From IMG/VR virus record IMGVR_UViG_3300034158_000023, positions 62,001 to 126,000 of that record: 64,000 nucleotides of DNA. One strand, 5' to 3'. How positions within the stretch are numbered: position 1 is the stretch's first letter; the number at the start of each line of letters is the position of its first letter. Shown piece by piece: positions 6,090-63,908 of this stretch. The notes below the pieces were generated by a model. It was not told the origin of the DNA and did no database searches. It saw nothing but the letters and a program-made list of their open reading frames with translations. Both the position numbers and the translations under genes were made by a program.

Positions 6090-6118
6090 TAGGTAGAGGC
6101 TTCGGCCTCTACCTATGA
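6090..6118. terminator. terminator hairpin (TTCG loop)
   Basis: TAGGTAGAGGC-TTCG-GCCTCTACCTA then TGACC. Confidence 0.75.
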
Positions 6119-6143
6119 CCACTTAAAATAAAAGGAATAACGA

Positions 6144-7319
6144 ATGACCACGATTTGTTGGGATGGTAAATACTTAGCCTCTGATAGTCACGCTACGTCG
6201 GTAATTACTAATGAAATTAACGAAGCTATCAAAATACATTGCCCTAAGTTTGTTTACATTGGAGAAGATAAAATCTTGGCAGTGGCTTTTGCTGGACGTA
6301 TAGCGGCGATGCGAAAGTTTGCTGAGTTACTTACATCAGCTAATGCCAAAGTACAATTGCAAGATATCATGGACTTATGTGGGGTTATCAGATCAGGGGA
6401 AAAGTTCTCGGCTATTATCTTGACTGAAGGTGATGATTATATCCTAGAATACAGACATCACCGAGTTAAGGGATTCTCCGCAACCTTTAGTAGAATGGTT
6501 GTAACCAAGATCAAAAACAAATTACCTATGGTGATTGGTTCAGGTACTCGCACCCTAGGTAAATATTCTGGCTTGGGATTAACTGCGCCAGCAATGGTTC
6601 TTGTAGCGATTGGACTAGATGGTTTCAGCACAGGAGGAACCGTTAGTTATTTAACTAAAGATGATCTAGATTACAAGAATCGATCACACTTAACCGAAGA
6701 GGAGTACGCAAAAGTTGAGAAACTTTTGCGTACTTTGTTAGTAGGTACTAAACCTCATAAACAGGAACCACGATTAATTATCGAACCTGTGTACGAAGAA
6801 CGTCTAATCGATATAGTGGAAGAGGCTGGGAAGTTTTTTGAGAGAATGCAAGAAGCGACTAAACCAACCGTACTCAAAACGATTATCTCGTGGGGTAATT
6901 TCAACCTTGGGGAGCAGATAGATGGTAACGCAGAACTCGCAAAGTGGCTTAGTGCAAGTCCAGTCTTAGTGAAGCGGATATCTGAAGGACAGCTATATGG
7001 GGAGTGGATTAGTCCAGGTAGTCAGTCGCTCATAGAAATAGAGGAAGGTAAACGTTCCAAATACAACAATGATGAAACAACCGCTGGAATCTACTTCTTA
7101 GACCCTGACAAAATTTGCCTTAGGGTAGTGGAGTTTAGTTGGGTGGTTACCCAACAACCAGATGTGCAAGTTCTGAATATTATTGCTCACCTAACACCGT
7201 ATGGTCCGCATGCTGATAAGTTGACAGAACTAACTGTCGCTAAATGTAGGATGCGAGCATTTCCTAGAGTTGAACGCAACCAGGAACTTACTTACGTTAC
7301 TGTAGATTTAATATGTTAA
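6144..7319 (+). CDS. Ntn-hydrolase (HslV/proteasome-beta-like) domain fused to a degenerate prohead-protease-like domain
   Basis: N-terminal TTICWDGKYLASDS, K, AG, GSG, TGG pattern; C-terminal RISEGQLYGEW..P, LTPYGPHADKL. Confidence 0.65.
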   Translation: MTTICWDGKYLASDSHATSVITNEINEAIKIHCPKFVYIGEDKILAVAFAGRIAAMRKFAELLTSANAKVQLQDIMDLCGVIRSGEKFSAIILTEGDDYILEYRHHRVKGFSATFSRMVVTKIKNKLPMVIGSGTRTLGKYSGLGLTAPAMVLVAIGLDGFSTGGTVSYLTKDDLDYKNRSHLTEEEYAKVEKLLRTLLVGTKPHKQEPRLIIEPVYEERLIDIVEEAGKFFERMQEATKPTVLKTIISWGNFNLGEQIDGNAELAKWLSASPVLVKRISEGQLYGEWISPGSQSLIEIEEGKRSKYNNDETTAGIYFLDPDKICLRVVEFSWVVTQQPDVQVLNIIAHLTPYGPHADKLTELTVAKCRMRAFPRVERNQELTYVTVDLIC

Positions 7320-7373: not shown

Positions 7374-7381
7374 TATATTAC
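7374..7381 (+). promoter_or_regulatory. early promoter motif TATATTAC
   Basis: Exact motif between terminator and gene. Confidence 0.7.
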
Positions 7382-7419
7382 CTTAGTGTTAACCACATTA
7401 ATAATAAAAGGAATACCCA

Positions 7420-15760: not shown

Positions 15761-15790
15761 GTGGGAGAGCTACGGCTCTCCCACTATGCC
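15761..15790 (+). terminator. terminator hairpin followed by TATGCC
   Basis: GTGGGAGAGC-TACG-GCTCTCCCAC. Confidence 0.75.
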
Positions 15791-15818
15791 ATTTACCTAA
15801 AATAAAAGGAATACTGTT

Positions 15819-17035: not shown

Positions 17036-17080
17036 CCAGTAATGAAGTGTGGATCTAATAATAAAAGGAAGTTGTGGGAA

Positions 17081-17188
17081 ATGGAAGAAGAGTCGGCTAA
17101 AACGGAATTTGCGTGTTACGTCCACATGAGTGTGGCGTGCACAATCATTTTAGCATCGTGGTTTTTAATACTCACGGTAGCATTTTAA
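17081..17188 (+). CDS. 35-aa single-TM microprotein (not in ORF track)
   Basis: AATAAAAGGAA leader; MEEESAKTEFACYVHMSVACTIILASWFLILTVAF; fills the gap up to the next leader. Confidence 0.6.
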   Translation: MEEESAKTEFACYVHMSVACTIILASWFLILTVAF

Positions 17189-17833: not shown

Positions 17834-18057
17834 TGCCATATAACCACTTTTGGTATCACGTTGGTGTATGTACACTTGCAATCATGGCAGTGCTTATAGC
17901 TATTATGGTTAGCATTGAAGTATATCGATATGGTATTTGTAGTGACCCTGATCGTTATGATAAATGTAAACGAATTAACACTAAACTGTACACGATCGCC
18001 TTAATCTTGTTACTAGTTAATGTTGGTGCACTTATGATAAGTCTTAGCTTAACATAG
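17833..18057 (+). CDS. small two-TM membrane protein
   Basis: 74 aa, two hydrophobic stretches, TAATG overlap. Confidence 0.75.
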   Translation: MPYNHFWYHVGVCTLAIMAVLIAIMVSIEVYRYGICSDPDRYDKCKRINTKLYTIALILLLVNVGALMISLSLT

Positions 18058-18158
18058 CTAAGCAGAAAGACCCCTTCTCAGGGTCTTTCTTTTTTTGCAA
18101 ACAAGGCTAAGCATATATTATCAAAGTAGTATAACACTCACAATAAAAGGTAAACCAC

Positions 18159-21489: not shown

Positions 21490-21507
21490 TTACTTAAATA
21501 AAAGGAA

Positions 21508-21928: not shown

Positions 21929-22040
21929 ACATCTTTACCTCTTGTAGCTCTGGCTCTAGGCGCTAGCCCATTTGCCGTAATATATAAAGAGAGATGTTTA
22001 CACTAGTATAATAGGGAGGGGATAAACCCTCCCGTTATGC
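21929..22040 (+). ncRNA. candidate small structured RNA
   Basis: No credible ORF between the putative promoter and the GGGAGGG/CCCTCCC terminator; ACATCT..CTCTT pairs with AAGAGAGATGT. Confidence 0.4.
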
Positions 22041-22073
22041 TGTCTTACTATTAAAATAAAAGGATTAAAGTAG

Positions 22074-25656: not shown

Positions 25657-25765
25657 TACCTGTCATATCTGTAGGAGGTAGCCCTCCTACATATGCCGTC
25701 TCCAATCATTTGTAAATATATATAGTCATTGTGTTATAGAAACATAAAACAAAAGGAAATATGTA

Positions 25766-26395: not shown

Positions 26396-26458
26396 TTAAA
26401 CTGTAGGGTCTAGGTATTAGACCCTATAACTGTGATTATTATTGAAAAGGAATTTATC

Positions 26459-26656
26459 ATGATTAACGTAACTGATTTTATCCGTCATCGTTTTAACCTG
26501 AGTGACTTCACTCAAATCCGTTTAGTAGAAGACAACATCATTGTACATGGTGTACGTATTGGTCGTATACATAACGCCCAAGATACTACATTGATAACAT
26601 TATCAGGTAGTGCCGAAGTAGTAGACTTAAACAAGTTCAGCAATTTATCCTATTAG
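26459..26656 (+). CDS. small hypothetical protein
   Basis: ATG 26459 after AAAAGGAA. Confidence 0.7.
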   Translation: MINVTDFIRHRFNLSDFTQIRLVEDNIIVHGVRIGRIHNAQDTTLITLSGSAEVVDLNKFSNLSY

Positions 26657-49347: not shown

Positions 49348-50589
49348 TCATCTATAGTGGGACATAGTAAGTGTCCTAAGTACTATGTAAAGTATCACAG
49401 CGGTGCGCTCAGGACGTGTGGGTACTGAACTCTTACGACCACTCCCTTCCTTAACTACTTTATCCCCCAGTTTCCTTAATAAAAGAACCTTAGACTCGTT
49501 TACTCGAGAACCTACTAGCATGGCTTTTAACTTCTCGATCACCAAACCTAAATCTTTAGTAGAGATTTTATTTTTAGTTAAGAAATCAAACGCATACAGA
49601 ATAGTTTCAGATAGTAACTGATCGATGTACGCTTTACGTTTATCGCGGATGTTATTACAAATCCATTCTAACGTAGACTTAACAGCTCTTGGATCAGCAG
49701 AGTTAATACCATTACAGATGATATCAATCAACTCTTGTTTGATGAATGAACTAGGTTCTTCAGTTAAGTCGTACAAGTACCGATGATACTGAGTGAAAGA
49801 ACGAGAGATGTCTTTAATAACAATCCCATCTTCAATCTGCATAATCTGTGAAGTGGTAATAGTTTTACCGTTAGCATCCCTAACTAAATAGAATACTTTG
49901 GTTTGTGCTTTCACTACGTTACGGATACGAGTTTGTACGTCAGATAAGAAATAAGCCTGAGCATCAAAAGGTAATGTAAGTAAACCTTTTCTGTGTACGC
50001 TTGTATGACCTACAGCATCCACTGAGCGAGCATGTATCAATGCGCCCCATGTACCTAACTGCTTAATCATGAACTGCATGCTAAGAGTGTTATAGGTGGC
50101 TTTAGCGATAGCTTCATTAGCAGGATACGCAAAGTAGTTAGACAGCAAAGAACTTAAGAACTTGTAATGCAACAACTTACAAATAACTACAGCACCTTCT
50201 TCACGCTGACTTTGTGATAATGATTTCTCAGTTAAGAATCTGTGGATCAAATACGACATAGCTAAGTTAATCGTACTAGATACAACTTTGTGGTCAGGGT
50301 TAATAACTGGCACTAGTAGACCTTTTTCATCAGGTATCTTAAGACTAGCTAAGTCACTCTGTAAGGCCACATCGTCAATCTCCATGATGTCATCAAACCA
50401 CTCATCACGGTCAGCATCTAACCACTTGATTGGGTACACACCTAACAGCCCAGAACCAAAGAAACTAATGTGGTCTGAGTTCTTAGTTACAAATTGTAGA
50501 TCTTTAGCTTTAATAGCCTTAAGTAATTTTGCGTCAATTTTCAACTTAACGCAGTGTGCATCAAACACCTCTTTAACTGCGAATGTCAT
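49348..50589 (-). CDS. conserved virion structural protein (phiKZ gp32-like)
   Basis: HISFFGSGLLGV, LYIVLR; late-type promoter upstream. Confidence 0.7.
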   Translation of the reverse strand: MTFAVKEVFDAHCVKLKIDAKLLKAIKAKDLQFVTKNSDHISFFGSGLLGVYPIKWLDADRDEWFDDIMEIDDVALQSDLASLKIPDEKGLLVPVINPDHKVVSSTINLAMSYLIHRFLTEKSLSQSQREEGAVVICKLLHYKFLSSLLSNYFAYPANEAIAKATYNTLSMQFMIKQLGTWGALIHARSVDAVGHTSVHRKGLLTLPFDAQAYFLSDVQTRIRNVVKAQTKVFYLVRDANGKTITTSQIMQIEDGIVIKDISRSFTQYHRYLYDLTEEPSSFIKQELIDIICNGINSADPRAVKSTLEWICNNIRDKRKAYIDQLLSETILYAFDFLTKNKISTKDLGLVIEKLKAMLVGSRVNESKVLLLRKLGDKVVKEGSGRKSSVPTRPERTAVILYIVLRTLTMSHYR

Positions 50590-51833: not shown

Positions 51834-51863
51834 AATAACCCCCTCTCAAGGGGTTATTTTTTT
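51834..51863 (+). terminator. intrinsic terminator
   Basis: AATAACCCC..GGGGTTATT plus T tract. Confidence 0.85.
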
Positions 51864-51884
51864 GTGTCTTTTTACAGAGACGGC

Positions 51885-52054
51885 ATAAAAAGCAGACCGA
51901 AGTCTGCTCGTTACGCCAGAGCTCATTCTGGTAAGGCAGTCGTATGACTTAGCGCGATAGTTACGTTATTGGTTTATGCCACTATGGACTACCGACGTAT
52001 CCGCGAATTGTTGCCTCTTAAGGAGCGTGTACTGATACTTACGGAGTAATGTAC
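51885..52054 (-). ncRNA. candidate ~170-nt structured RNA
   Basis: Late-type promoter TAATAGTATG|TAC, consecutive hairpins, own TTCG terminator, no ORF. Confidence 0.65.
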
Positions 52055-52125
52055 ATACTATTATATTAATTTACTCGTGTGCCTAATAGGTTGAGGTATT
52101 GTTTGATTACTTATAGGAGTTAACC

Positions 52126-54943: not shown

Positions 54944-55026
54944 AATCTACCCTCGATCAAAAATTATTGGGGTTGGTTAATATATGTAAGAATATCTTTT
55001 TTCATAAAACACTAAAGGAAAATATC

Positions 55027-55998
55027 ATGACCCTAGAAAAAGCAGTAGGTACTTTACGCATTTATGGCTGTGGCGGCACTGGTGTAAAACGTGCTCATCC
55101 ATTTCAGAGACAGCCACATAACGAAGGCTTAGCAGACGTCTCCGTTACTTATGTTGATACCAGTATGTCCGACTTTGCAAAGGACATCGATTTAGAGGAC
55201 TGTTTCCTCACTGAAGATACTGACGGTAGCGGTTCTAAACGAAGCGCAAACCCACACATCATTAGCAGCGTGATCCGTCAGGTTCCTGTAAAGTTTGCTC
55301 CAGGTGACGTTAACGTGGTAATTATGTCAGGTAGTGGTGGTAGTGGTTCAGTGATCGGTCCTTTACTTTGTAAAGAGTTGTTGATGCGTGATGCGCCAAC
55401 TATTGCCATCGTGGTGCTCAGTACTGTTAGTCAGTTAGCAATCACGAACTGCTTAGATACCATCAAAACTTTAGCAGGCCAATCACGGTTAGCTAACAAG
55501 CCACTGATTGCTATTTTCCACAACAATGGTGCCAACACCGATATAGACGCTGTAGATGAAGCAATCTACAATCAAATCACAGCGTTGCAAATCCTAGCAA
55601 GTCGATCACATAGGGGTTTAGATACCGCTGACGTAGCTAACGTGTTGAACTACACCAATGTAATTGACTTAGAACCACAGTTGTCTACTATGGACATCGT
55701 TACATCAGTGGAAGAACTCGCTGAAGTGTCATACCCAGTAACTGTATGTACAGTAGCTAAGAAAGCTCCAGACTTGTCGTCTATCGGTATAGAGCACTGC
55801 TGTGATGGTATTATGCAACACACTTACAGCGATGTAGATGAGCTACACTTCGCAACTAGTATCACTGAACTACCTAATGTAGTCAAGATGCTAGAATCGG
55901 CATTACTTAGAGTCAAAGAGCGTACTGGTTCAAGACCTACCACTGTTAAACTGGTAGATGCCAATACACTCCCAGATGACGGTTTGTTTTTCAGCTAG
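55027..55998 (+). CDS. phuZ: PhuZ phage tubulin
   Basis: GCGGTG, VDTS, GSGSKR, SGSGGSGS tubulin signature, acidic DDGLFF tail; ATG 55027 after AAAGGAA. Confidence 0.92.
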   Translation: MTLEKAVGTLRIYGCGGTGVKRAHPFQRQPHNEGLADVSVTYVDTSMSDFAKDIDLEDCFLTEDTDGSGSKRSANPHIISSVIRQVPVKFAPGDVNVVIMSGSGGSGSVIGPLLCKELLMRDAPTIAIVVLSTVSQLAITNCLDTIKTLAGQSRLANKPLIAIFHNNGANTDIDAVDEAIYNQITALQILASRSHRGLDTADVANVLNYTNVIDLEPQLSTMDIVTSVEELAEVSYPVTVCTVAKKAPDLSSIGIEHCCDGIMQHTYSDVDELHFATSITELPNVVKMLESALLRVKERTGSRPTTVKLVDANTLPDDGLFFS

Positions 55999-56007
55999 GA
56001 GGCAACA

Positions 56008-56421
56008 ATGGCTAAAAGAGCAGCAAAGATCTTTTTGGGTGGTACCTGCAAAGGCGTCGATTGGCGCGCTGCGGTAATGCCAAAGATGATGAATGGTTAT
56101 TTCAATCCACATGTTACTGATCGTGAGTATCAAGAGTCTGACCGCGAAGAAGAGTTATTGCAACGCCGTTACGATTGTACCCACATGTGTTATGTTATCA
56201 CTAGTGGATCAGTTGGTTTCTACAGCGTAGCAGAAGCTACTGAAGATGTGGTATTACGACCTCACATCACGTACGTTTGTTTCTATGAAGATCCTGAAAA
56301 TCCATGGTCAGAGGAACAAAAGGTGTCTGTAGCCGCTACTAAAGCTATGTACGCTCAGTACACTAATAAAGTGTACGACGACCTAGAAGATCTAGTGGAT
56401 GCATTAAACCAAGTGCATTAG
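56008..56421 (+). CDS. nucleoside 2-deoxyribosyltransferase-like protein
   Basis: KIFLGGTC, WR, YFNP.V, YSVAE motifs. Confidence 0.7.
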   Translation: MAKRAAKIFLGGTCKGVDWRAAVMPKMMNGYFNPHVTDREYQESDREEELLQRRYDCTHMCYVITSGSVGFYSVAEATEDVVLRPHITYVCFYEDPENPWSEEQKVSVAATKAMYAQYTNKVYDDLEDLVDALNQVH

Positions 56422-56433
56422 TAGTAATGGTAT

Positions 56434-56511
56434 GTACTGACATGTGGTAGTCGGCACATTCCTTTTATTTAATCTAGCAATTTGCTTAGCCACCTTAGGG
56501 TGGCTTTTTTT
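56434..56511 (+). ncRNA. candidate trans-acting sRNA complementary to the early-gene leader/SD
   Basis: TATG late-type start, 5' hairpin, unpaired ATTCCTTTTATTTAA, terminator. Confidence 0.6.
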
Positions 56512-56686
56512 GCTCTTATTTAACCAGAAGCATTTTAAGCCACTTTTTATAGTTTTGGCTACCTATCTACTAGGTTTCCAATAAAGTTGCTTATGGTGTG
56601 TTATATTTTATTTAAACACCACATATATGAAAGACTATGCACACATATATTATCCTATTGATGGTACTATAATAAAAGGATTATCT

Positions 56687-60344: not shown

Positions 60345-60485
60345 CTCATGGTGAGAGGGTGCTGTATAGACACTTGTCAGAGAGCTTTGTGTTCATAGCG
60401 AGCACAAAGACGGTACGAGTGTCTATATAGGATTTATTTCGTCCACGGTTGTTCTTCTCGTATATCGTAGGGTATGTACGAATAT

Positions 60486-60516
60486 AAGCAACAGGGTTTT
60501 CCTGTTGCTTTTTTTT
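60486..60516 (+). terminator. intrinsic terminator
   Basis: AAGCAACAGG-GTTTT-CCTGTTGCTT plus T tract. Confidence 0.85.
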
Positions 60517-60581
60517 GCCCGTTTTGAATTATAATTTACTATAACCCAGTATAAGTTGTAGGAACATTTGCGGAGTTACAG

Positions 60582-62843: not shown

Positions 62844-63908
62844 TTATGAAAACAATCTGTTGTAGATGAAGTCCATCTTCATGTTTACTAATGTAGATAG
62901 GACAGAATCACTATACCAGTTCTCATTGTTTAGTCGTTTAAAGACACGCTCAAATTCTACTAAGTGTTTGGAGTTCTCTGGGTTAGGTTTACATGTCCCT
63001 AACAGAATCAGATAATCCATAGTAGTTAAGCAGGCCATTGCTTTACCTAACCTAGTCGGTGCAAAGTATGGAGTTTGTGCGTAAGCCAATCCAGTCGTGC
63101 CACTAGGTAAAGGTACAGAACTCAATACGTCTGCCCACTCGTAACTTTGCTCAGTGAACCTGTCTCGCATAGCTGTGAGAACGTCATGAGTAAAGGTCTC
63201 AGATGAGGATAAAGAAAATGGAATACGTTTTAAAGTATCAGCTGGTTTGGGATATGTACCTTCCAGTATTCTTGACAACCTGTTCAACCACGCTACGTCA
63301 TTGTGACTACGTATCATGTTTGGCAATACCCAGTTAGCTATAAACTGTCCAGTTGTTTGTGGGTTATCAGGATAAACTTTAAGTTGATACTGACGCCAGC
63401 AAATAAACATGTACATTAACATTGCTGCATCTATACCGATTACGGAGAAGCTCTCTTCGTTGGTATTAGGAACACCGTTCAACAAAGTGTAAGTGATGTC
63501 AGTTCTACCATGAGAGAAAACTTTTAATGGTTCTAACTCATACCAAGGTTTATTGCTAGTACGATCTAACTCTACGGAAAGTAATACTTCCTCGTAGCCA
63601 TAAAACCATCCTTTGCGAGCAAGTTTAGCGGAATGGATGGCTCCACCAATCTTAAGTGCGTTACATACGCTAGGAGATACGGAATCACAAATATCGAAGA
63701 ACCTTTCTTTATCACCTGACCATACCACGTTCATGGTGTTAATTAAAGTAACAAGAGGATGGTTAGATCGAACAGTCTCTCCACTAGCCCTATAATAGTC
63801 AATGGCTCGAATGGTGTTCTCGTTAATCCGTTTTTGCACATAAGACATTTTAGGAAACACTAGCGAGCGACGATTGGCATCTAGCTTAGTTTTAAATAGT
63901 TTAATCAC
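62844..63908 (-). CDS. conserved virion protein (phiKZ gp52-like)
   Basis: HPLV, VLPNM..SH.D..WLNR; convergent with DNA pol; late promoter upstream. Confidence 0.65.
   Translation of the reverse strand: MIKLFKTKLDANRRSLVFPKMSYVQKRINENTIRAIDYYRASGETVRSNHPLVTLINTMNVVWSGDKERFFDICDSVSPSVCNALKIGGAIHSAKLARKGWFYGYEEVLLSVELDRTSNKPWYELEPLKVFSHGRTDITYTLLNGVPNTNEESFSVIGIDAAMLMYMFICWRQYQLKVYPDNPQTTGQFIANWVLPNMIRSHNDVAWLNRLSRILEGTYPKPADTLKRIPFSLSSSETFTHDVLTAMRDRFTEQSYEWADVLSSVPLPSGTTGLAYAQTPYFAPTRLGKAMACLTTMDYLILLGTCKPNPENSKHLVEFERVFKRLNNENWYSDSVLSTLVNMKMDFIYNRLFS

What the first reader, a model, noticed from the sequence alone, without database searches (positions are those of the whole stretch)
56434..56511. 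Putative late sRNA that is the exact antisense of the early-gene leader: a global translational switch
Seen: ATTCCTTTTATTTAA (56458-56472) is the reverse complement of the shared leader. It matches 13/13 to AAATAAAAGGAAT at 6126 and 15800, 14/14 to TTAAATAAAAGGAA at 21494, and 9-12 nt to most other leaders. It lies unpaired between a 5' hairpin (GTACTGAC 56434-41 / GTCGGCAC 56450-57) and a terminator (AGCCACC/GGTGGCT + T tract). Established: phiKZ late promoters have TATG with G as +1. Here TAATGGTATG puts +1 at 56434, the exact hairpin base. In read-through RNA from phuZ, the extra GGUAU can pair with AUUCC and mask the anti-SD core, so only the late-initiated form would be active. Inference: one ~78-nt RNA could shut off translation of dozens of early/middle mRNAs at the late transition, or titrate a leader-binding factor. 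I know of no description of such a system.
Basis: partly seen in the sequence, partly recalled or inferred. Interest (0 to 1): 0.92.

Follow-up and report, generated by a model that had tools for sequence, protein, structure and literature searches.

The report
Conserved anti-ribosome-site small RNA candidate
Just after the tubulin (phuZ) operon of an uncultivated jumbo phage lies a conserved, terminator-ended ~78-nt RNA module whose exposed stretch is the exact complement of the ribosome-binding leader shared by about twenty early and middle genes. It is a credible but unproven candidate for an RNA that switches those genes off.

Summary
ATTCCTTTTATTTAA (56458-56472, + strand) is the exact reverse complement of the stereotyped leader AAATAAAAGGAAT. 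It is the only exact copy on the 'wrong' strand, and it lies unpaired between a 5' hairpin and an intrinsic terminator.

New evidence from five related lineages in public assemblies:
- The hairpin co-varies: 3 of 8 pairs carry compensatory changes.
- The core ATTCCTT(TT) is kept in four of the five lineages while the flanks diverge.
- Against the nearest lineage, the non-coding module is more conserved (90% nt identity) than its flanking genes (79-84%).
- The TATG sits inside GTATGTA, which is 9-fold enriched in intergenic DNA and precedes virion-protein genes.
- This terminator lies 66 nt from the preceding stop codon, against 23 nt or less for eight others.
- The seed is predicted to pair (dG <= -10 kcal/mol) with 19 of 68 start regions; 18 of them are in the 1-27 kb metabolism block. 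None of 500 permuted seeds does as well.

Not shown: that the RNA exists, where it starts, when it is made, or that it represses anything. One lineage lacks both the TATG and the seed. A cis role on the next gene's leader, or a sequence-specific 3'-UTR element with another function, remains possible.

Verdict: a real, conserved RNA element; the global-switch reading is plausible but untested.

The parts
55027..55998 (+). phuZ (tubulin-like), first gene of the upstream operon. TATGTA lies 41 nt upstream, at 54983.
   Evidence: tblastn to phage PhuZ/tubulin, about 30-35% identity; Pfam Tubulin/TubZ_C on orthologues; AATATATG conserved upstream in 4 lineages
56008..56421 (+). Nucleoside 2-deoxyribosyltransferase-like gene (137 aa). 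Its stop is followed by two further in-frame stops.
   Evidence: PF15891 (weak) on orthologues; tblastn hits annotated as nucleoside 2-deoxyribosyltransferase
56429..56437 (+). GGTATGTAC: phiKZ-type TATG promoter-like motif. TATG is 56431-56434; the putative +1 is G56434.
   Evidence: GTATGTA has 7 intergenic copies against 0.81 expected, 0 of 2000 shuffles. It precedes structural genes at 27-30 nt. GTATGTA is kept in lineages A, E and C, and TATG in D. TATG with G as +1 is established for phiKZ nvRNAP (PMC4666361).
56432..56459 (+). 5' hairpin: arms 56432-41 and 50-59, loop AUGUGGUA.
   Evidence: Folds. Covariation across 4 lineages: 96.9% of cells paired, 3 of 8 pairs with changes on both sides, slid controls 19-44% paired.
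56456..56472 (+). Single-stranded seed ACAUUCCUUUUAUUUAA, the anti-leader / anti-Shine-Dalgarno stretch.
   Evidence: Exact complement of the leader; P(unpaired) about 0.99; 11-mer ACATTCCTTTT shared with lineage C and ATTCCTT with D; invariant between A and E
56476..56486 (+). Small spacer hairpin AGCAAUUUGCU
   Evidence: Folds; an equivalent hairpin is present in lineages E and B
56488..56511 (+). Intrinsic terminator: 7-bp G+C-rich stem, tetraloop, T run
   Evidence: Terminator scan. Structure kept with different sequences in all lineages. It starts 66 nt after the stop codon, against -1 to 23 nt for 8 other intergenic + strand terminators.
6126..6138 (+). Example target leader AAATAAAAGGAAT, 5 nt before the ATG at 6144. 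Others with 0-2 mismatches end at 836, 1870, 2731, 4155, 7414, 14010, 15812, 17201, 20494, 21508, 22066 and 26668.
   Evidence: RNAduplex dG -10 to -15 kcal/mol
56600..56655 (+). Promoter-like blocks for the downstream operon. GTTATATTTTATTTAA...TATATG (G at 56629) resembles a phiKZ middle promoter. ACATATATTATCC (56643-55) resembles the early TATATTAC type.
   Evidence: Blocks conserved in lineages A, E, B and C; the same TATATTAyC motif lies upstream of many genes; middle motif AAanTTACc with TATG in phiKZ (PMC4666361)
56671..56689 (+). Leader AATAAAAGGATT plus the ATG of the downstream gene (real start 56687). This is a possible cis target of the seed.
   Evidence: Protein alignment fixes the start. 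The seed pairs with this leader in the MFE of the read-through RNA in lineages A, E and C.

Best explanation
The 90 nt between the stop of the ndt-like gene and the T run form a conserved regulatory RNA module. Its parts, in order, are a 5' hairpin, an exposed pyrimidine seed (ACAUUCCUUUUAUUU), a small hairpin and an intrinsic terminator.

The module is probably released in two ways: as a ~78-nt RNA from its own TATG-type promoter (+1 = G56434), and/or as the 3' end of the phuZ-ndt mRNA.

Its seed base-pairs with the stereotyped leader AAUAAAAGGAAU, covering the Shine-Dalgarno sequence. This would block 30S binding on the mRNAs of the early/middle gene block: thymidylate synthase, NAD ligase, a QueC-like gene and many small ORFs. 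Late genes with GGAG-type ribosome sites would be spared.

Shown here: the anatomy; the complementarity and its specificity; conservation and covariation of the module; promoter-motif enrichment; the atypical position of the terminator.

Inferred: that the RNA accumulates, where it starts, its timing, that pairing happens in vivo, and that it represses.
For: Complementarity:
- The 13-mer is an exact complement; no match in 100 shuffles.
- It is the only exact - strand copy of a motif that otherwise sits before start codons.
- 19 of 68 start regions pair at dG <= -10 kcal/mol against a mean of 3.7 (maximum 16) for 500 permuted seeds. 18 of the 19 lie in the 1-27 kb block.

Structure:
- The seed is unpaired.
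- The hairpin is supported by covariation.

Conservation:
- A and C share only three motifs of 7 nt or longer in this 3' region: GTATGTA, ACATTCCTTTT and TGTGGTA.
- The chance of a shared 11-mer is about 0.002, and of a 7-mer shared by A, C and D about 0.0065.
- A against E: the module is 90% identical, against 79-84% for flanking genes. There is no change in the seed or loop, and the two stem changes are structure-compatible.
- Lineage B lost the TATG and the TCC core together.

Promoter and position:
- GTATGTA is enriched in intergenic DNA, and TATG is conserved upstream of orthologous genes.
- The terminator is displaced 66 nt from the stop.

Literature: jumbo phages are known to make small RNAs of unknown function (PMC11512511).
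Against: - There are no expression data of any kind; the phage is known only from assemblies.
- Only five lineages are available, A and E are close, and one (B) lacks the seed.
- The conserved core in C and D is just ATTCCTT(TT), a generic anti-SD rather than the full anti-leader.
- The two outermost stem pairs lie upstream of the proposed +1, so the hairpin fits a read-through 3' UTR equally well.
- TATG alone is necessary but not sufficient in phiKZ (PMC4666361). The same GGTATGTAC before the DNA polymerase gene is not kept in B or C.
- One RNA titrating about 20 or more mRNA species needs very high abundance.
- The duplexes are A/U-rich (-10 to -15 kcal/mol).
Confidence: 0.4

Rival explanations
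1. Cis-acting translational insulator. In RNA that reads through the terminator from the phuZ-ndt operon, the seed pairs with the leader of the next gene (56671-56682) and hides its ribosome site. Only transcripts started at the promoters lying between seed and leader are then translated. This is the logic of T4 gene e early transcripts, or of P1 c4 RNA acting on a downstream RBS.
For: - In the MFE of the read-through RNA, the seed-leader helix forms in lineages A, E and C (8.1, 9.3 and 7.7 expected pairs) and not in B (0.15).
- One compensatory change exists between A (leader AAUAAAAGG / seed CCUUUUAUU) and C (AACAAAAGG / CCUUUUGUG).
- Promoter-like blocks lie between the two partners.
- The downstream genes overlap, which suggests translational coupling.
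Against: - A strong terminator lies between the partners, which are about 215 nt apart.
- The seed matches the general consensus (GGAAU, 13-15 nt) better than the adjacent leader (GGAUU, 10 nt).
- In C the conserved AUU of the seed has no partner in the adjacent leader (GGUUU).
- The C at that leader position also occurs in the phuZ leader of lineage C, so the 'compensation' may track the general consensus.
Confidence: 0.12
2. Passive 3'-UTR architecture. A stabilising hairpin plus a U-rich tract acts as a weak first terminator ahead of the main one. The complementarity to A-rich, purine-rich leaders is then a by-product.
For: - Every lineage has a hairpin followed by a U-rich tract, including B (long hairpin + CUUUUUAAAU), which has no anti-SD.
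- No transcript evidence exists.
- Rfam gives only insignificant sRNA-like hits.
Against: - The permutation test shows the match is not compositional.
- CC inside a U tract is unfavourable for termination, yet it is the conserved part.
- The seed is as conserved as the promoter blocks and more conserved than the terminator's own sequence.
- The first hairpin did not pass the terminator scan.
- Other terminators in the window need no such 66-nt preamble.
Confidence: 0.22
3. A sequence-specific site for a protein or another RNA. The hairpin plus CAUUCCUUUU would bind, for example, an Hfq-like chaperone, an RNase or a phage RNA-binding protein, to control stability or export of the phuZ-ndt mRNA. 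Leaders would not be the target.
For: The sequence is conserved beyond what structure requires. A/U-rich single strands beside stem-loops are typical chaperone and RNase E sites (my own knowledge).
Against: This does not explain why the sequence is the exact complement of the most stereotyped motif in the genome. No candidate binding protein was identified.
Confidence: 0.12
4. The motif is the ribosome-binding site of a small - strand gene.
For: On the - strand, AAAAGGAAT is followed by an ATG with no spacer (13 codons), a GTG 1 nt further on (17 codons) and an ATG 15 nt after AAGGAA (26 codons).
Against: - Spacings of -1 and +1 nt (from the end of AAGGAA) are too short, and +15 nt too long, compared with 5-7 nt at real leaders.
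- The ORFs are 26 aa, at least 32 aa, 9 aa, 1 aa and none in lineages A, E, C, B and D.
- A 2-nt indel in E shifts the frame of the 29-aa - strand ORF (56404-56493), and also of the 46-aa + strand ORF (56444-56584).
- No promoter-like motif was seen on the - strand when I read 56512-56580; the only scan hit there is one of 13 sigma-70-type matches, no more than the 11.5 expected by chance.
Confidence: 0.03

Closest known systems
3'-UTR-embedded base-pairing sRNAs of bacteria that have their own promoter inside or after the upstream gene (for example MicL and DapZ; review PMC9438474 listed; details from my own knowledge)
   Same: Located at the 3' end of an operon and shares the mRNA's intrinsic terminator. 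It has a 5' stem-loop, a conserved single-stranded seed and a U tail. The predicted action is occlusion of the ribosome-binding site.
   Different: It is encoded by a virulent jumbo phage. The seed is aimed at a leader shared by a whole temporal class of the phage's own genes rather than at a few specific mRNAs. Chaperone and transcript are both unverified.
c4 antisense RNA of phages P1 and P7 (PMC12197685)
   Same: A phage-encoded RNA of about 77 nt whose exposed complementary stretches bind around a ribosome-binding site downstream and block translation.
   Different: No sequence or Rfam similarity. c4 controls one antirepressor operon in a temperate phage. Here a terminator and promoters separate the RNA from the nearest leader, and many distant leaders match better.
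T4 shut-off of early mRNAs by RegB (endonuclease cutting GGAG in Shine-Dalgarno sites) and RegA (translational repressor), from my own knowledge
   Same: The same proposed logic: class-wide inactivation of early translation-initiation regions through a shared sequence feature.
   Different: Those effectors are proteins; this one would be an RNA acting by pairing.
C/U-rich anti-SD seed sRNAs such as RsaE/RoxS of Firmicutes, from my own knowledge
   Same: An unpaired pyrimidine motif pairs with the SD core of many mRNAs.
   Different: Different motif (UCCC repeats in loops), cellular origin and metabolic regulon. No homology.
Small RNAs mapped in jumbo phages 201phi2-1 and phiKZ by ONT-cappable-seq (PMC11512511)
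   Same: Short transcription units in which a terminator closely follows a start site, some of them intergenic, in nucleus-forming jumbo phages. Functions are unknown.
   Different: None has been described with an anti-leader seed. The conserved one lies in the 5' UTR of a tail gene. There is no homology to this locus.

Membership tests
Any curated RNA family (Rfam 15) | Covariance-model score at or above the family's gathering threshold | tested here: not met
   No hit at gathering threshold in the whole window. The best permissive hits were MicA at 22.1 bits against 41 needed, and RyhB, isrD and STnc480, all with E > 1.
Intrinsic (Rho-independent) terminator | G+C-rich stem-loop immediately followed by a T run | tested here: met
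   56488-56505 has 7 pairs (5 G-C) and a loop of 4, then TTTTTT. The structure is conserved in all lineages.
phiKZ-type nvRNAP (late) promoter | TATG on the non-template strand, with G as the start site | tested here: inconclusive
   TATG is present at 56431-34 inside GTATGTA, which is enriched in intergenic DNA and conserved upstream of orthologous genes. However, TATG is necessary and not sufficient (PMC4666361), and no 5'-end data exist.
Trans-acting base-pairing sRNA | Accessible conserved seed complementary to target translation-initiation regions | tested here: met
   P(unpaired) is about 0.99. 19 of 68 start regions pair at dG <= -10 kcal/mol, and 0 of 500 permuted seeds equal that. The core is conserved in 4 of 5 lineages.
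Trans-acting base-pairing sRNA | A discrete, stable transcript with defined ends | not testable with these tools
   No transcriptome is available for this uncultivated phage.
Trans-acting base-pairing sRNA | Seed-dependent regulation of targets, shown by compensatory mutations | not testable with these tools
   This requires reporter assays.
P1/P7 c4-type antisense RNA | Complementarity to the RBS region of a gene downstream in the same transcription unit | tested here: inconclusive
   There are 10 bp (A, E) or 8 bp (C) with the next gene's leader, and the helix appears in read-through folds. However, a terminator and promoters intervene, and there is no similarity to the c4 family.
Protein-coding small gene on the - strand | Conserved ORF at proper spacing from the SD | tested here: not met
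   Spacings are -1, +1 and +15 nt from the end of AAGGAA. ORF lengths are 26 aa, at least 32 aa, 9 aa, 1 aa and none across the lineages.

The most novel reading that the evidence does not exclude
A nucleus-forming jumbo phage uses one small RNA, made from a late-type TATG promoter at the end of the phuZ operon, as a class-wide translational off-switch. Its seed is the complement of the leader shared by the early and middle genes, so its accumulation silences them all while sparing late genes that use GGAG-type ribosome sites. It would be an RNA counterpart of T4 RegA/RegB. Read-through RNA from phuZ would carry the seed in a masked form.
Probability: 0.25. Interest if true: 0.85.

Novelty: new variant of a known kind. 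Interest (0 to 1): 0.62.

Why it matters
How jumbo phages time gene expression after transcription is largely unknown. Their small RNAs have been mapped, but none has an assigned function (PMC11512511, PMC8244752).

A single RNA aimed at a leader shared by a whole temporal gene class would be a new regulatory design for viruses. It would also explain why that leader is so stereotyped.

The hypothesis is directly testable with seed and compensatory mutants.

Even if the global reading fails, the locus is a clean example of a conserved, co-varying non-coding element in an uncultivated phage clade. It also gives usable promoter-motif definitions for that clade.

Tried and rejected
1. megablast of the locus against GenBank phages found no match. 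The window is IMG/VR contig UViG_3300034158_000023, and only itself was found in IMG/VR.
2. JGI metagenome scans found nothing, either with the ndt protein alignment or with the conserved promoter pattern.
3. The genome-contig scan with the promoter pattern gave two hits, both inside unrelated bacterial coding sequence, so chance.
4. The IMG/VR scan for CATTCCTTTTATTT returned more than 100 unrelated contigs, which I judged from contig names alone to be generic matches. It was uninformative.
5. An orthologue of the 6144 gene (L020) was fetched to obtain leaders from another lineage. Its intergenic regions are 98-100% identical to the window, so it adds nothing on covariation.
6. The nearest cultured relative by PhuZ (Xanthomonas phage RTH11) is G+C-rich and has no comparable element after phuZ.
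7. + strand ORF 56444-56584 (46 aa, hydrophobic) and - strand ORFs were rejected because indels and stops break them in relatives.
8. The idea that the seed autoregulates phuZ through its own 5' leader: 10 nt match in lineage C but only 5-7 in A and D. It is not favoured.
9. The GGTATGTAC + terminator unit before the DNA polymerase gene was examined as a possible paralogue. It has no exposed anti-SD and is conserved only in A and E.

Full report
**What the window is.** The 64-kb window is part of IMG/VR contig UViG_3300034158_000023, 215 kb long.

- It encodes a PhuZ-type tubulin (55027-55998; about 30-35% identity to PhuZ of cultured jumbo phages).
- It also encodes a tail sheath, virion proteins and a terminase, and a divergent DNA polymerase.
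- A relative carries chimallin just beyond the window's end.

It is therefore an uncultivated nucleus-forming jumbo phage. It has no close relative in GenBank.

- ATTCCTTTTATTTAA lies at 56458-72. The hairpin arms are at 56434-41 and 56450-57, with one A.C mismatch and one G.U.
- The terminator stem is 56488-56505, followed by a T run.
- The 13-mer is an exact complement of the leaders at 6126 and 15800. No dinucleotide shuffle of the window produced any exact copy.
- With one mismatch allowed there are eight + strand copies, all ahead of start codons, and this single - strand copy; 0.24 are expected.

The leader itself is real and striking. AATAAAAGGA(A/T) sits 5-7 nt before the start codon of most of the 34 genes at 1-27 kb (18 copies of the 12-mer within two mismatches). 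It also precedes two small unannotated ORFs. That block encodes a thymidylate synthase fusion, an NAD ligase and a QueC-like protein. The structural block at 27-54 kb mostly uses GGAG-type sites.

**Anatomy.**

- *78-nt form.* Starting at G56434, the RNA folds into a 5' hairpin, 18 unpaired nt that hold the seed, a small hairpin and the terminator. The MFE is -21.4 kcal/mol with z = -3.07. Seed P(unpaired) is about 0.99.
- *Read-through form.* With 40 upstream nt added, the hairpin extends through AUGU/ACAU and GG/CC, and seed P(unpaired) falls to 0.38. It holds in lineage E too (0.40) but only weakly in C and D.
- *Terminator position.* Eight other intergenic + strand terminators begin -1 to 23 nt after the preceding stop codon; this one begins 66 nt after it. 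The hairpin-seed segment is thus an extra insert, not ordinary 3'-UTR spacing.

**Specificity of the complementarity.** I ran RNAduplex with the seed (56456-76) against the -30..+6 region of 68 genes. It gives dG <= -10 kcal/mol for 19 of them. Eighteen of the 19 lie in the 1-27 kb block, and the other is the gene just downstream. Five hundred permutations of the seed gave a mean of 3.7 and a maximum of 16. The match is therefore to the leader sequence, not to its base composition, and late genes are spared.

**Relatives.** The flanking proteins led to syntenic contigs in Logan, NCBI and ENA assemblies. They fall into five lineages:

| Lineage | Loci | Relation to the window |
|---|---|---|
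| A | window plus L003, L014-L019 | same lineage |
| E | L013 | ndt gene 84% nt identity |
| B | L004, L005 | Ndt protein 71% aa identity |
| C | L006-L008 | 61% aa |
| D | L009-L011 | 60% aa |

*Within A.* The whole 265-nt intergenic region is identical in five contigs, while phuZ and ndt differ by up to 5%. This is suggestive only. The contigs are not independent, and the next gene is also less diverged.

*A against E.* The module is 90% identical, against 79% (phuZ), 84% (ndt) and 82% (downstream gene). There is no change in the seed or the hairpin loop. The two stem changes turn A.C into A-U and C-G into U-G. The remaining changes cluster in the linker after the seed.

*C and D.* The hairpin sequence is entirely different but still pairs. 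On a hand-built alignment of the eight outer pairs, 96.9% of cells pair, and three pairs carry changes on both sides. Slid controls pair at 19-44%. This rests on four sequences, with the loops replaced by a fixed linker.

*The seed after the hairpin.* Immediately 3' of the hairpin, C keeps ACATTCCTTTT and D keeps ATTCCTT. A and C share only three motifs of 7 nt or longer in this region: GTATGTA, the seed 11-mer and TGTGGTA. Under independence, the chance of a shared 11-mer is about 0.002, and of a 7-mer shared by A, C and D about 0.0065. Because the sequences are homologous these are upper-bound arguments. The rest of the region, however, has diverged beyond recognition.

*Lineage B is the exception.* It has TATAG instead of TATG, a longer hairpin that swallows that position, and CUUUUUAAAU instead of the TCC seed. 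The joint loss fits a promoter-plus-seed unit that decayed, but it is a single event.

**Is there a promoter?**

- In phiKZ the non-virion RNA polymerase starts at the G of TATG. [quoted passage not shown]
- Here the TATG lies inside GTATGTA. That motif has seven fully intergenic copies against 0.81 expected (0 of 2000 shuffles).
- Four of the seven sit 15-32 nt before a start codon. The genes include a virion structural protein gene (62844-63908, - strand), the phrog_2921 gene (49348-50589, - strand) and a 57-aa membrane-like ORF.
- TATG is conserved upstream of orthologous genes while the flanks diverge. AATATATG precedes phuZ in four lineages, and TATGTAAC precedes the phrog_2921 gene in A and C.
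- GTATGTA is kept at the candidate in A, E and C, and TATG in D.

This raises the odds of a start at 56434 but does not prove it. Three cautions apply:

- The same GGTATGTAC before the polymerase gene is not conserved in B or C.
- The two outermost hairpin pairs lie upstream of the proposed +1.
- TATGTA also precedes phuZ, and in relative L013 a TATG lies upstream of chimallin, so 'late-specific' is not established.

**Cis or trans?** In folds of the read-through RNA up to the next start codon, the seed pairs with that gene's leader in A, E and C but not in B. One U-A to C-G double change separates A from C. This supports real pairing with a leader.

Three points favour many targets over the adjacent one:

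- The seed matches the general GGAAU consensus over 13-15 nt, against 10 nt for the adjacent GGAUU leader.
- In C the conserved AUU has no partner in the adjacent GGUUU leader.
- A strong terminator lies between the partners.

I therefore rank the trans, multi-target model first and the cis insulator second.

**Rejected readings.**

- *A - strand gene.* The possible starts lie -1, +1 and +15 nt from the end of AAGGAA. The resulting ORFs are 26 aa, at least 32 aa, 9 aa, 1 aa and none across the lineages.
- *Longer ORFs on either strand.* The + strand 46-aa ORF and the - strand 29-aa ORF are both broken by a 2-nt indel in E.
- *A known RNA family.* No Rfam family matches, and there are no tRNAs.

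**Comparison with what is known.** The module works like a 3'-UTR-embedded base-pairing sRNA, and like the c4 RNA of P1/P7 (PMC12197685). The proposed logic matches the protein-based early shut-off of T4 by RegB and RegA (my own knowledge). Small RNAs have been mapped in 201phi2-1 and phiKZ without assigned function, and none has an anti-leader seed (PMC11512511; PMC8244752). RBS occlusion by an sRNA is a known kind. Aiming one seed at a leader shared by a temporal gene class would be a new variant.

**Verdict.** The element is real, conserved and very likely functional as RNA. That it acts by pairing with AAAAGGAAU-type leaders is the best explanation (about 0.4 for the trans form, plus about 0.12 for cis). 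The full 'global late switch' has a probability of about 0.25. No expression evidence exists, and all mechanistic steps are inferred.

Noticed in passing
window 51885-52058 (- strand), in the intergenic region 51834-52125: GTATGTA on the - strand (52052-58) is followed by about 165 nt without an ORF and then by a - strand terminator (51892-51907). This could be a second non-coding RNA unit. It is identical but for three substitutions in lineage E, and TATGTA is kept at the aligned place in C. The fold is not unusually stable (z = -1.37).
   Followed up: partly
window 60345-60520: The terminator before the DNA polymerase gene lies 141 nt after the preceding stop. It is preceded at 10 nt by the same 9-mer, GGTATGTAC, as at the candidate. 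The intervening region contains blocks conserved in all four lineages (for example TAYGAGWG...ATATAG), so it may be another structured RNA or leader.
   Followed up: partly
window approx. 6094-6119, 15771-15794, 22027-22048, 25678-25699 and 2697-2716: A recurrent cassette lies upstream of leader-bearing genes: a G+C-rich hairpin without a T run, followed immediately by TATG, then 7-13 nt, then AATAAAAGGA. It may be a promoter placed against a processing or stability hairpin. Its function is unknown.
   Followed up: no
window 17885-18058 (+): An unannotated 57-aa ORF with two hydrophobic segments lies 15 nt after a GTATGTA motif and just before a terminator. It may be a small membrane protein expressed from a TATG-type promoter.
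   Followed up: partly
window 17060-17188 and 26445-26656 (+): Two further copies of the leader in 'intergenic' DNA each precede a small ORF (about 36 aa and 65 aa). All + strand leader copies are therefore attached to ORFs.
   Followed up: partly
window, many intergenic regions (for example 1840-1855, 7380-7392, 18108-18120, 56643-56655, 56600-56629, 60533-60546): Three promoter-like classes parallel those of phiKZ: TATATTAyC (early-like), ATAATTTAC followed about 13 nt later by TATG (middle-like), and TATG(TA) alone. The 56600-56655 blocks are conserved in lineages A, B, C and E.
   Followed up: partly
window 56442-56449 (hairpin loop AUGUGGUA); L006 just after the seed: The 7-mer UGUGGUA is invariant in the hairpin loop of A and E, and it reappears 3' of the seed in C. 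It is complementary to (U)ACCACA(UG), found at the start codons of 20500 and 18159 and upstream of the leaders of 7420 and 6144. It may be a second contact, or it may be chance.
   Followed up: no
window 56422-56686 against L003, L014-L016 and L019: The whole 265-nt intergenic region is identical in five lineage-A contigs from different samples, while the flanking phuZ and ndt genes differ by up to 5%. The cause is either strong constraint or a recent recombination tract.
   Followed up: partly
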